In this document: piece after piece, positions 49,861-49,991 of the stretch
How positions within the stretch are numbered: the first letter of the stretch is position 1
Layout: each line of letters opens with the position of its first letter
Sequence record: MG752970.1
DNA length: 64,000 bases
Strand: one strand, 5' to 3'
The notes under the pieces: model-generated
Told to the model about the DNA's origin: nothing
What the model saw: only the letters and a program-made list of their open reading frames with translations
Database searches by the model: none
Program-made: the position numbers and the translations under genes

Positions 49861-49991
49861 TTGAGGGAACTGTCGATACAGTGACGTTTCGTGCTATCCA
49901 CTACACTAACAATCTCTTCCGAGACTGTGTGGGATTCGAACCCACCCTGACTATTTCACAGATAGAAGTAACTGTATCTATCACCACTCAA
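49861..49991 (-). ncRNA. yrlA: YrlA-type Y RNA (circularly permuted tRNA mimic)
   Basis: End pairing TTGAG/CTCAA and GATACAGT/ACTGTATC; T arm GTGGG-TTCGAAT-CCCAC; acceptor-like stem ACAGTCTC-GGAA-GAGATTGT; then TA + D arm GTGT-AGTGGATA-GCAC; Ro60 gene on the same strand 4.8 kb away. Confidence 0.8.

What the first reader, a model, noticed from the sequence alone, without database searches (positions are those of the whole stretch)
49861..49991. Phage-encoded YrlA-type Y RNA pairing with the phage Ro60
The order T arm, acceptor-like stem closed by a GGAA tetraloop, D arm, all enclosed by an end-to-end helix, is the circularly permuted tRNA mimicry known for YrlA. It sits inside a tRNA cluster 4.8 kb from the TROVE gene, so automated annotation would probably miss it. 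With the second Y element and the odd tRNAs, it points to a phage Ro60-RNP system. A role in protecting or degrading RNA, or in decoying anti-phage tRNases, is inference.
Basis: partly seen in the sequence, partly recalled or inferred. Interest (0 to 1): 0.8.

Follow-up and report, generated by a model that had tools for sequence, protein, structure and literature searches.

The report
Unannotated phage tRNA-like Y RNA
Hidden among the tRNA genes of the Ralstonia jumbo phage RsoM2USA is a 131-base gene for a tRNA-mimicking 'Y RNA', the usual RNA partner of the Ro60 protein that the phage also encodes; it is a real but unannotated new example of an already known kind of phage RNA-protein system.

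Summary
On the minus strand at 49861-49991 lies a 131-nt RNA gene built as end-to-end helix, conserved internal loop, stem, V hairpin, T arm, 8-bp stem closed by GGAA, and D arm. The window is Ralstonia phage RsoM2USA nt 1-64000; neither GenBank nor the genome paper annotates this element.

Rfam's YrlA model gives only a partial, sub-threshold hit (18.5 bits, threshold 69). It also misses every comparable RNA next to Ro60 genes in related phages. A covariance model built from 39 such RNAs, without the window, matches the element end to end (83.3 bits, E 9e-18). The family shows strong covariation and lies on the Ro60 strand in 92 of 92 cases.

The adjacent 74-nt element (49997-50070) is a short, YrlB-type Y RNA (43.6 bits, E 1e-9). 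ORF57 (43612-45078) is a genuine Ro60 homologue. A second YrlB-YrlA tandem lies at 75.2-75.5 kb, outside the window.

Verdict: this is a YrlA-type Y RNA and very probably the partner of the phage Ro60. Phage Y RNAs have been known since 2014, so it is a new member of a known kind. Its function is inferred (tethering or gating Ro60, RNA decay or counter-defence).

The parts
49861..49991 (-). YrlA-type (tRNA-like) Y RNA, 131 nt; the model match spans 49860-49994
   Evidence: Model R1, built without the window: 83.3 bits, E 9e-18, full length. Rfam YrlA gives a partial hit of 18.5 bits. Structure.
49984..49991 (-). 5' strand of the terminal (outer) helix, UUGAG.GG
   Evidence: Pairs with 49861-49867. 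In the family, 90% of cognate end pairs form at least 5 consecutive bp, against 18% of non-cognate pairs.
49861..49867 (-). 3' strand of the terminal helix, CC.CUCAA
49978..49985 (-). Conserved 5' box GGUGAUAG spanning the internal loop; proposed Ro60-binding site (inferred)
   Evidence: Conserved as GGUG.UAG across alignment A2. Identical in the neighbouring short Y RNA.
49866..49875 (-). Conserved 3' box CGACAGUUCC; proposed Ro60-binding site (inferred)
   Evidence: The CG..UGUUCC type occurs almost only with Ro60 proteins at least 41% identical to the window's. Other Ro60 clades carry other boxes.
49971..49978 (-). 5' strand of the 8-bp stem (anticodon-stem equivalent), GAUACAGU
   Evidence: Pairs with 49875-49882. 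This helix shows changes on both sides in 5 of 5 modelled pairs across 109 sequences.
49875..49882 (-). 3' strand of that stem, ACUGUAUC
49951..49965 (-). V hairpin: 4-bp stem CUAU/AUAG with 7-nt loop CUGUGAA, which has an anticodon-loop-like signature
   Evidence: In the family, 52 of 108 have a 7-nt loop and 32 of those 52 carry Y-U-NNN-R, against 13% and 7% in shuffles. Stem support is weak.
49929..49945 (-). T arm, GUGGG-UUCGAAU-CCCAC
   Evidence: This helix is 99.1% paired in the family.
49909..49928 (-). Closed acceptor-like stem: 8 bp with GGAA tetraloop at 49917-49920
   Evidence: All 6 modelled pairs covary in the family.
49891..49906 (-). D arm, GUGU-AGUGGAUA-GCAC, preceded by UA
   Evidence: This helix is 98.1% paired in the family.
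49997..50070 (-). Short, YrlB-type Y RNA of 74 nt: same Ro boxes and stem, no tRNA-like module. The model match spans 49992-50074.
   Evidence: Model R2, built from 23 relatives without the window: 43.6 bits, E 1e-9, the only hit in the window. It shares 25 identical 5' nucleotides with the long RNA, while the terminal helix differs by compensatory changes (UCGAAG/CUUCGA vs UUGAG/CUCAA).
43612..45078 (-). Ro60 (TROVE + vWA) protein gene, ORF57, 488 aa, with an extra C-terminal helical hairpin
   Evidence: Pfam TROVE 32.4 bits, cut-off 23. PHROG 850 'RNA-binding protein', 5e-36. PDB 9KOP/9L5Y (phiLo Ro60), 3e-20. AF2 model pLDDT 84.7, and the top 13 Foldseek hits are all Ro60.
49722..49798 (-). 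tRNA-Pro(UGG), next gene downstream of the Y RNA after a 62-nt structured spacer
50072..50147 (-). Low-scoring tRNA-Gly(UCC) that ends 1 nt before the short Y RNA
   Evidence: ARAGORN. Rfam tRNA 31.5 bits.

Best explanation
The 131-nt element is the gene for a YrlA-type Y RNA of phage RsoM2USA. Together with the adjacent 74-nt YrlB-type RNA, it is a cognate RNA partner of the phage's own Ro60 protein (ORF57).

**Shown**
- The sequence has the complete YrlA architecture.
- It belongs to a large covarying family of phage RNAs that sit on the Ro60 strand.
- Its stem motifs are of the type that goes with its Ro60 clade.

**Inferred**
- The RNAs are made as part of a tRNA-type polycistronic transcript. 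The run is tRNA-Gly, short Y RNA, long Y RNA, tRNA-Pro, with spacers of 1-62 nt, and the transcript would be cut by the tRNA-processing nucleases.
- Ro60 binds the bulged helix formed by the 5' and 3' ends (boxes GGUGAUAG and CGACAGUUCC).
- The tRNA-shaped module, which has no free CCA end and no anticodon stem-loop in the usual place, acts as a handle. It would tether the Ro60 ring to a tRNA- or RNA-binding effector.
- The most likely effector is the host 3'-5' exoribonuclease PNPase, as in the Deinococcus and Salmonella complexes and in vitro for Thermus phage phiLo.
- Bound Y RNA also gates access to the Ro60 cavity.

**Most likely net role:** phage-directed handling (decay or quality control) of structured or damaged RNA during the long infection cycle, in a genome that carries about 44 tRNA genes.
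For: **Identity of the long RNA**
- The window is MG752970.1 nt 1-64000.
- R1 hit of 83.3 bits, E 9e-18, full length, from a model that excludes the window. The best real tRNA in the window scores 22 bits.

**The family**
- 110 hits in 66 loci. 95.1% of cells are paired, with 750 double-change cells against 241 in shuffles and at most 191 when partners are slid.
- The outer helix is supported by the cognate versus non-cognate test.
- The tertiary 15:48 pair covaries: G:C in 66 and A:U in 33 of 109 sequences.

**Link to Ro60**
- 54 of 66 loci hold a Ro60 homologue.
- 92 of 92 hits lie on its strand, and 85 of 92 lie upstream.
- The 3' box type tracks the Ro60 clade.

**The short RNA and paralogues**
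- R2 hit of 43.6 bits, E 1e-9.
- A second YrlB-YrlA tandem in the same genome keeps 100% of pairs, with 9 of 20 pairs changed on both sides.

**The protein**
- Ro60 identity is supported.

**Literature**
- YrlA RNAs in 254 bacteria and 22 phages, and their architecture (PMC4201824).
- The YrlA crystal structure is tRNA-like (bioRxiv 10.1101/312249).
- Thermus phage phiLo Ro60 binds two phage Y-like RNAs and, with them, host PNPase (PMC12135203).
Against: - The Rfam YrlA model reaches only 18.5 bits (threshold 69) and aligns only the T arm, closed stem and D arm.
- The published 5' motif GNCGAAN0-1G is not present. The clade variant ..AGUUACUUC stands in its place (direct reading; alignments).
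- The window RNA is the only family member with G:G at the 15:48 position.
- It lies 4.8 kb from Ro60, the largest distance among 92 hits (median 221 nt). Genes on both strands lie in between.
- There is no expression, processing or binding data for this phage. Promoter and terminator scans are uninformative.
- The seeds of R1 were collected with a 17-nt pattern that the window also contains, so part of the score is built in.
- PNPase tethering is extrapolated from other systems.
Confidence: 0.8

Rival explanations
1. Same identity, different job. The Ro60-Y RNA particle is a counter-defence device rather than an RNA-decay or quality-control machine. It would neutralise a host anti-phage system, or sense or repair damage done by host tRNA-targeting nucleases.
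For: - In E. coli phage Bas63, the Ro60-like gp130 was identified as a counter to the 'ppl' defence system. It sits next to tRNA genes that the authors suspect include Y RNAs (PMC11482910).
- Jumbo-phage TROVE proteins are discussed with RNA-repair systems used in conflicts (PMC7824862).
- Here all four Y RNAs are embedded in tRNA arrays.
- The V hairpin has an anticodon-loop-like 7-nt loop.
Against: - There is no sequence-level relation between ORF57 and Bas63 gp130. tblastn of ORF57 tallied no Escherichia among the ten most frequent organism names, and none appeared in the 40 of 89 records shown.
- No defence system of the Ralstonia host was examined.
- The tRNA-like module lacks the anticodon stem-loop in the canonical position.
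- The V stem is only weakly supported.
Confidence: 0.2
2. The RNA is a Ro60-independent tRNA mimic. It would be a decoy or competitor for tRNA-binding enzymes, and only shares ancestry with Y RNAs.
For: - It lies 4.8 kb from Ro60, and the second copy lies 30 kb away, inside tRNA clusters.
- It has conserved tRNA elbow elements.
Against: - The most conserved non-tRNA parts are the 5' and 3' boxes. The short Y RNA, which has no tRNA module, shares them.
- The box type follows the Ro60 clade.
- In relatives the RNAs are on the Ro60 strand in 92 of 92 cases, at a median distance of 221 nt.
Confidence: 0.07
3. The element is a decayed relic of a tandem tRNA pair or a permuted tRNA gene, with no function of its own.
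For: - YrlA RNAs are thought to derive from dimeric tRNA transcripts (bioRxiv 10.1101/312249).
- The Rfam tRNA model gives a weak 19.4-bit hit.
- The neighbouring tRNA-Gly is itself low-scoring.
Against: - Every helix is intact.
- The two paralogues in this genome keep all pairs through 9 compensatory changes.
- Family-wide covariation includes non-tRNA helices.
- ARAGORN calls no tRNA here.
Confidence: 0.03
4. The region is protein-coding: the mechanical ORF 49818-50168 on the + strand, 116 aa with a TTG start.
For: Only its presence in the ORF list.
Against: - It is not annotated in GenBank.
- It runs antisense across the two Y RNAs and a tRNA gene.
- The conservation pattern in relatives is that of RNA helices with compensatory changes, not of codons.
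Confidence: 0.01

Closest known systems
YrlA of Salmonella Typhimurium and other bacteria (Chen et al. 2014, PMC4201824; Rfam RF02553; crystal structure 6CU1, bioRxiv 10.1101/312249)
   Same: - The order is 5' stem strand, V region, T arm, closed acceptor-like stem, UA, D arm, 3' stem strand.
- It has the conserved YUAY (here UUAC) and conserved T and D loops.
- It lies on the same strand as Ro60.
- It is accompanied by a shorter YrlB.
   Different: - It scores 18.5 bits against a threshold of 69.
- The 5' motif is AGUUACUUC instead of GNCGAA.
- It has a long outer helix with clade-specific boxes GGUGAUAG and CGACAGUUCC.
- It has a V hairpin with a 7-nt loop.
- There is no canonical 15:48 pair.
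- It lies 4.8 kb from Ro60, inside a tRNA array, with no rtcBA genes seen nearby.
[quoted passage not shown] 2014, as summarised in PMC12135203)
   Same: - It is phage-encoded and paired with a phage Ro60.
- Model R1 also finds four copies directly upstream of the CcrColossus TROVE gene (L005). The window RNA and the published phage examples therefore fall in one model family.
   Different: - Those RNAs lie within a few hundred nt of Ro60. Here they are dispersed as two YrlB-YrlA tandems in tRNA clusters, 4.8 and 30 kb away.
- The host is a beta-proteobacterial plant pathogen, and the phage is a 344-kb myovirus.
Thermus phage phiLo Ro60 with Yrl1/Yrl2 (PMC12135203; PDB 9KOP, 9L5Y)
   Same: - It is the closest solved structure to ORF57 (E 3e-20 by sequence, 2e-18 by fold).
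- Two phage Y-like RNAs are bound by the phage Ro60.
- It forms a ternary complex with host PNPase in vitro, which is the mechanistic template used here.
   Different: - The proteins are about 22% identical.
- The phiLo RNAs were picked by a CGAA motif and stem-bulge-stem shape, and are not described as tRNA-like.
- The RsoM2USA RNAs have not been tested.
Deinococcus radiodurans Rsr-Yrn1-PNPase (RYPER) complex
   Same: It gives the proposed working principle: the Y RNA stem binds the Ro60 ring, and the other module tethers an exoribonuclease and gates the cavity (summarised in PMC4201824).
   Different: Yrn1 has a different arrangement of tRNA-like arms. Its role there is cellular (stress response), not viral.
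Bas63 gp130, a Ro60-like counter-defence protein (PhageMaP preprint, PMC11482910)
   Same: A phage Ro60-like gene lies next to tRNA genes that are suspected to hide Y RNAs.
   Different: - It is related only at the fold level. The preprint bases the Ro60 link on structure, and it was not among the tblastn matches to ORF57 that were shown.
- Its Y RNAs have not been shown.
- Its phenotype is defined (counter to ppl). None is known here.

Membership tests
YrlA (Rfam RF02553) | Covariance-model score at or above the gathering threshold (69 bits) | tested here: not met
   The hit is 18.5 bits, E 0.37 in a 601-nt search, model positions 31-81 only, and there is no hit at gathering threshold. The threshold also excludes all tested Ro60-adjacent phage relatives: they score 24-56 bits, and 0 of 17 loci pass.
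YrlA (Chen et al. 2014 definition) | T-arm-like hairpin with a tRNA T-loop sequence | tested here: met
   GUGGG-UUCGAAU-CCCAC at 49929-49945.
YrlA (Chen et al. 2014 definition) | D-arm-like hairpin 3' of the T arm, preceded by UA, with A14 and G18 G19 equivalents | tested here: met
   UA + GUGU-AGUGGAUA-GCAC at 49891-49908.
YrlA (Chen et al. 2014 definition) | [quoted passage not shown] | tested here: met
   8 bp plus a GGAA loop at 49909-49928. The helix covaries in the family.
YrlA (Chen et al. 2014 definition) | The 5' and 3' ends pair to form the stem that carries the Ro60 site and replaces the anticodon stem | tested here: met
   An 8-bp stem and a 5+2-bp outer helix around an internal loop. 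Covariation is shown.
YrlA (Chen et al. 2014 definition) | GNCGAAN0-1G motif near the 5' end | tested here: not met
   There is no CGAA in the first 45 nt (direct reading). The aligned position carries ACAGUUAC. The phage clade has CGGUUAC or CAGUUAC there.
YrlA (Chen et al. 2014 definition) | Conserved YUAY at the start of the V region | tested here: met
   UUAC at 49968-49971. It is nearly invariant in A2, within the motif GUUACUUC.
YrlA (Chen 2014; Wang 2018) | Levitt-type tertiary pair 15:48 (G:C or A:U) | tested here: not met
   The family has G:C in 66 and A:U in 33 of 109 sequences. The window has G:G, the only such case.
YrlA (Chen et al. 2014 definition) | Encoded on the same strand as Ro60 and within about 4 kb of it | tested here: inconclusive
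   It is on the same strand, but 4,782 nt away, just outside the published range. It is the farthest of 92 family hits.
Y RNA in general | Bound by Ro60 in vivo or in vitro | not testable with these tools
   There is only indirect support: box type follows the Ro60 clade, and the RNAs share the Ro60 strand in 92 of 92 cases.
YrlA | Carries tRNA modifications (pseudouridine 55, dihydrouridine) and is a substrate of tRNA enzymes | not testable with these tools
   This needs RNA from infected cells.
   83.3 bits, E 9e-18, positions 1-133 of 133. It ranks 46th of 110 hits.
   43.6 bits, E 1e-9, positions 1-78 of 78. It is the only hit in 64 kb.
tRNA | Cloverleaf recognised by a tRNA model or finder | tested here: not met
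   Rfam tRNA scores 19.4 bits against a threshold of 29, with the D arm skipped. ARAGORN makes no call.
Ro60 / TROVE protein (ORF57) | TROVE (HEAT-repeat ring) plus vWA domain; similarity to solved Ro60 structures | tested here: met
   Pfam TROVE scores 32.4 against a cut-off of 23. vWA_Ro60 scores 23.0, below its cut-off of 27.7. PDB phiLo Ro60 matches at 3e-20. The top 13 Foldseek hits are all Ro60, though TM-scores are only 0.34-0.45. More than 7,700 homologues have E at or below 1e-20.

The most novel reading that the evidence does not exclude
In jumbo phages with large tRNA sets, Y RNA genes have moved out of the Ro60 locus into the tRNA operons. There they are made in step with the phage tRNAs.

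In this reading the Ro60-Y RNA particle is a tRNA-centred conflict device. It uses a complete permuted tRNA mimic, whose V hairpin keeps an anticodon-loop-like 7-nt loop, to bait, sense or recruit host tRNA-targeting defence nucleases or tRNA-repair enzymes. That would protect the phage's translation apparatus.

It would also link the system to the Bas63 gp130 counter-defence phenotype.
Probability: 0.12. Interest if true: 0.75.

Novelty: new member of a known kind. Interest (0 to 1): 0.4.

Why it matters
**For this phage.** It adds four unannotated non-coding RNA genes, two of them in the window. It also turns 'TROVE domain protein, function unknown' into a specific, testable RNP in a biocontrol candidate against bacterial wilt.

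**More generally.**
- The curated Rfam YrlA threshold missed all 17 Ro60-linked phage loci put to it at the curated threshold. These belong to a family of 110 RNAs in 66 loci found here. Some members are mis-called as tRNAs, for example in CcrColossus and L039.
- Phage tRNA counts and Y RNA surveys are therefore both biased.
- The clade-specific boxes (GGUG.UAG, GUUACUUC, CG..UGUUCC) covary with the Ro60 clade and give a concrete hypothesis for the protein-RNA recognition code.
- The function of phage Ro60 RNPs is still open: RNA decay with host PNPase, or counter-defence. A lytic phage with separable Y RNA loci is a convenient system in which to test it.

Tried and rejected
- **Rfam at gathering threshold on the window.** Only six tRNAs were found. 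In E-value mode on 49700-50300 there were only weak hits to YrlA, tRNA and Flavo-1, with E 0.24-0.37. I reject Flavo-1 as chance: 19 bits against a threshold of 42.
- **Finding close relatives.** The search for related loci with the single Ro60 protein gave one locus. No phage record shares the region at nucleotide level, and only the tRNA parts match. There is therefore no orthologous locus for direct comparison, and I used family-level comparison instead.
- **Column-wise pairing of the outer helix and V hairpin in A2.** The result was blurred by register shifts. For the outer helix I replaced it with the cognate versus non-cognate end test. The V stem remained only weakly supported (69% against 59% in shuffles).
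- **Promoter and terminator scan of 43.4-51 kb.** There were no more sites than in shuffles. The only notable one is a strong hairpin after Ro60.
- **A third Y RNA next to Ro60.** There is no GUUACUUC motif or model hit between 45079 and 49860.
- **Permuted tmRNA or a true tRNA as identity.** Neither has model support at this site.
- **First alignment of short Y RNAs (A3).** It contained misaligned rows and was replaced by the cleaner A4.
- **PHROGs and Pfam scan of neighbouring ORFs for RNA-repair partners (RtcB or similar).** None were found in 41.5-57 kb. The hits were glycosyltransferases and a gp30.3/NADAR protein.
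Full report
**What the window is.** The 701 bases around the finding match Ralstonia phage RsoM2USA (MG752970.1, 343,806 bp) at 100% identity and at the same coordinates. The window is therefore nt 1-64000 of that jumbo myovirus.
- GenBank annotates only 'hypothetical protein' CDSs between 42 and 58 kb and no RNA genes.
- The genome paper lists ORF57 (43,612-45,078) as a TROVE-domain protein and counts 44 tRNAs. A search of its text for 'Y RNA' and 'Ro60' found no occurrence (PMC8504454).

**The observation.** On the minus strand, 49991 to 49861 reads as follows:
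- a terminal helix (UUGAG/CUCAA plus GG/CC)
- an internal loop embedded in the strings GGUGAUAG (5') and CGACAGUUCC (3')
- an 8-bp stem (GAUACAGU/ACUGUAUC)
- UUAC
- a V hairpin with a 7-nt loop
- a T arm with the loop UUCGAAU
- an 8-bp stem closed by GGAA
- UA
- a D arm with the loop AGUGGAUA

Every pair of this model is canonical. The model costs -36.7 kcal/mol against an MFE of -41.1. The unconstrained MFE finds the outer helix, the stem, the T arm and the GGAA hairpin (z = -2.7).

The element lies in the run tRNA-Gly(50292-50365), tRNA-Gly(50072-50147), short element, this element, tRNA-Pro(49722-49798). All are on the minus strand. It is 4,782 nt upstream of the TROVE ORF on the same strand.

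- Rfam at gathering threshold reports no YrlA.
- With permissive settings on 601 nt, the YrlA model gives 18.5 bits (threshold 69, E 0.37). It covers only model positions 31-81, that is T arm, closed stem and D arm.
- Taken literally this is 'no covariance-model hit', so I asked whether the threshold is meaningful for phages.
- I fetched loci around the closest Ro60 homologues: phage records and metagenomic contigs encoding 55-57% identical Ro60.
- Directly upstream of Ro60 on its strand, Rfam YrlA gives full-length but sub-threshold hits of 24-56 bits.
- None of 17 further loci reaches the threshold, and one such RNA is called a tRNA instead.
- The Rfam cut-off therefore fails for the whole phage clade, not just here.

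**An independent model.** The relatives share the string GUUACUUC and the T loop.
- A pattern scan of viral contigs returned 120 loci, 72 of them with a Ro60 match.
- I aligned 39 clean examples without the window (A1).
- RNAalifold recovered the stem, T, closed stem and D helices, with compensatory changes in 18 of 20 pairs.
- The resulting model R1 hits the window at 49860-49994(-) with 83.3 bits, E 9e-18, over all 133 positions. The best genuine tRNA in the window scores 22 bits.

Caveat: the seeds were gathered with a 17-nt pattern that the window also has, so part of the score is built in. Two points limit that concern:
- The match extends through the 5' box, V region, D arm, 3' box and end helix.
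- R1 also finds members that the pattern did not select, for example next to the Ro60 genes of Microcystis phage Mvi-JY20, Brevundimonas phage Kabachok and Caulobacter phage CcrColossus.

CcrColossus is one of the phages in which Y RNA-like genes were already reported (PMC12135203 citing Chen et al. 2014). This ties the R1 family to the published class.

**Family properties.** Over 100 sources, R1 finds 110 RNAs in 66 loci. The window ranks 46th.
- On that alignment 95.1% of cells are paired. There are 750 cells changed on both sides, against 241 in column shuffles and at most 191 when partners are slid. The alignment is fitted to the model, which favours it somewhat.
- The terminal helix shifts register between sequences, so I tested it differently. 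Of cognate 5'/3' end pairs, 90% form at least 5 consecutive pairs, against 18% of non-cognate combinations.
- The tRNA tertiary 15:48 pair covaries (G:C 66, A:U 33 of 109). This argues for a tRNA-like fold in the family. The window RNA is the single G:G exception.
- Linkage to Ro60 is tight. 54 of 66 loci contain a Ro60 homologue, all 92 RNAs in those loci lie on its strand, and 85 lie upstream at a median of 221 nt.
- The window is the extreme at 4,782 nt. Loci hold at most about 10 kb of flank, so distant copies elsewhere would have been missed.
- The 3' box follows the protein clade. CG..UGUUCC goes with Ro60 proteins at least 41% identical to ORF57. CCGA.UUGAUCUC or U-rich variants go with clades at 22-30% identity.
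- That pattern is what cognate recognition predicts, although shared descent alone could also produce it.

**The second element.** The 74 nt at 50070-49997(-) share 25 identical 5' nucleotides and the 3' box with the long RNA. They replace the tRNA-like module with a short A-rich loop. The terminal helix differs by compensatory changes.
- Similar short RNAs accompany the long ones in many relatives. They are nearly identical in design in the contigs with the closest Ro60.
- A model from 23 of them, without the window (A4, R2), finds exactly this element (43.6 bits, E 1e-9) and nothing else in 64 kb.
- It is thus a YrlB-type Y RNA. The order short-then-long matches the yrlBA order known in Salmonella (my own knowledge).

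**The protein.** ORF57 passes Pfam TROVE (32.4 bits, cut-off 23) and matches PHROG 850 'RNA-binding protein' (5e-36).
- It has more than 7,700 homologues at E 1e-20 or better, named Ro ribonucleoprotein where a name exists.
- It matches the Thermus phage phiLo Ro60 structures by sequence (3e-20).
- An AlphaFold model (pLDDT 84.7) retrieves only Ro60 structures as its 13 best hits: phiLo, human, Xenopus and Deinococcus. TM-scores are modest, 0.34-0.45.
- Residues 428-487 form an extra helical hairpin that the 436-aa relatives lack.

**Beyond the window.** I scanned the whole genome with R1 and R2.
- A second tandem appears at 75,424-75,510 (short, 42.6 bits) and 75,202-75,345 (long, 66.8 bits). 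Both are on the minus strand, again between tRNA genes, 30 kb upstream of Ro60.
- The two long paralogues keep 100% of the modelled pairs, although 9 of 20 pairs differ on both sides.
- This is strong evidence for selection on structure within this one genome.
- All other tRNA genes lie at 75-112 kb.

**How it most likely works.**
- *Shown:* the architecture, family membership, covariation, and linkage of the family to Ro60.
- *Established elsewhere:* Y RNAs bind the Ro60 ring through the helix formed by their ends. The other module tethers PNPase and gates the cavity (PMC4201824). The YrlA module folds like tRNA but lacks a CCA end and an anticodon loop (bioRxiv 10.1101/312249). A phage Ro60 binds phage Y-like RNAs and, with them, host PNPase in vitro (PMC12135203).
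- *Inferred here:* the RNAs are co-transcribed and processed with tRNAs. ORF57 protein binds the boxed helix. The tRNA-shaped handle recruits a host effector, most likely PNPase, for decay or surveillance of structured RNA during infection.
- *Alternative job:* a counter-defence role is a serious alternative for the same particle. The Ro60-like gp130 of phage Bas63 counters the ppl system and also sits beside tRNA genes (PMC11482910).

**Comparison and novelty.** The element works like, and by architecture is, a YrlA-type Y RNA.
- It fails three formal criteria: the Rfam threshold, the literal GNCGAA motif, and the 15:48 pair.
- It lies just outside the published 4-kb neighbourhood.
- The first two failures are shared by the whole phage clade. 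The third is peculiar to this copy.
- Phage Ro60/Y RNA pairs have been known since 2014, and TROVE proteins 'with a tRNA-like partner' are noted for jumbo phages (PMC7824862).
- I therefore class it as a new member of a known kind.
- The modestly new points are the dispersal of two YrlB-YrlA tandems into tRNA arrays far from Ro60, the clade-specific boxes, and the demonstration that standard annotation misses or mis-calls this clade.

**Verdict.** Observation confirmed. Interpretation supported. Function inferred. Interest 0.4.

Noticed in passing
Outside the window: MG752970.1 75202-75345(-) and 75424-75510(-) (L135:11202-11345 and 11424-11510): A second YrlB-YrlA tandem lies in the same phage, between tRNA-Gly(GCC) and tRNA-Met, 30 kb upstream of Ro60 (R1 66.8 bits, R2 42.6 bits). 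About 80 nt between the two RNAs contain an isolated T-arm-like hairpin.
   Followed up: partly
window 50148-50291 (-): The 144-nt spacer between the two tRNA-Gly(UCC) genes folds far better than shuffles (z = -4.2, 0 of 200). It has no Rfam match and no homologue in phage records. It may be another structured RNA or a processing element.
   Followed up: partly
window 49799-49860 (-): The 62-nt spacer between the Y RNA and tRNA-Pro forms a hairpin closed by a 9-bp stem (z = -3.9, 0 of 200 shuffles).
   Followed up: partly
window 50072-50147 (-): A second tRNA-Gly(UCC) copy scores only 31.5 bits in the Rfam tRNA model, with several non-canonical pairs. It ends 1 nt before the short Y RNA, and may be a degenerate or specialised tRNA.
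   Followed up: no
window 55744-55821 (-): This tRNA has anticodon CUA (an amber suppressor; ARAGORN labels it 'Pyl'). The genome paper already notes it.
   Followed up: no
A2 family alignment; window 49951-49965: In about half of the phage YrlA-like RNAs the V hairpin has a 7-nt loop with the anticodon-loop signature Y-U-NNN-R-A. It is followed by a GGUC-type variable loop and the T arm. That is what the dimeric-tRNA origin model predicts for the upstream tRNA's anticodon arm. The window loop is CUGUGAA.
   Followed up: partly
L005:5164-5231 (Caulobacter phage CcrColossus) and L039:2305-2372: Y RNA-like genes are annotated or scored as tRNAs. The GenBank 'tRNA-Gln' in CcrColossus lies inside an R1 hit (82.2 bits). 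In L039, Rfam tRNA scores 32.8 bits inside an R1 hit of 101 bits.
   Followed up: partly
L008, L010, L011, L013, L014 (metagenomic contigs encoding 55-57% identical Ro60): The closest Ro60 relatives sit in phage-like contigs inside very dense tRNA arrays with a tmRNA. A long Y RNA lies just upstream of the gene, and two short Y-like RNAs lie just downstream.
   Followed up: partly
window 43612-43755 (C-terminal ~50 codons of ORF57) and 43563-43589: ORF57 carries a predicted helical hairpin of about 50-60 residues (428-487) that its 436-aa relatives lack. A 12-bp hairpin with a T run, terminator-like, follows the gene.
   Followed up: no
Outside the window: MG752970.1 331545-331953(-) (L140:17545-17953): ARAGORN calls a permuted tmRNA with a tag peptide. 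This was not verified with Rfam.
   Followed up: no
window 48004-48465 (-): ORF62 is a T4 gp30.3 / NADAR-family protein (Pfam 1.8e-44). Glycosyltransferase-like ORFs lie at 46489-47307 and 56032-57231. No RtcB or RtcA was seen among the ORFs scanned between 41.5 and 57 kb.
   Followed up: no
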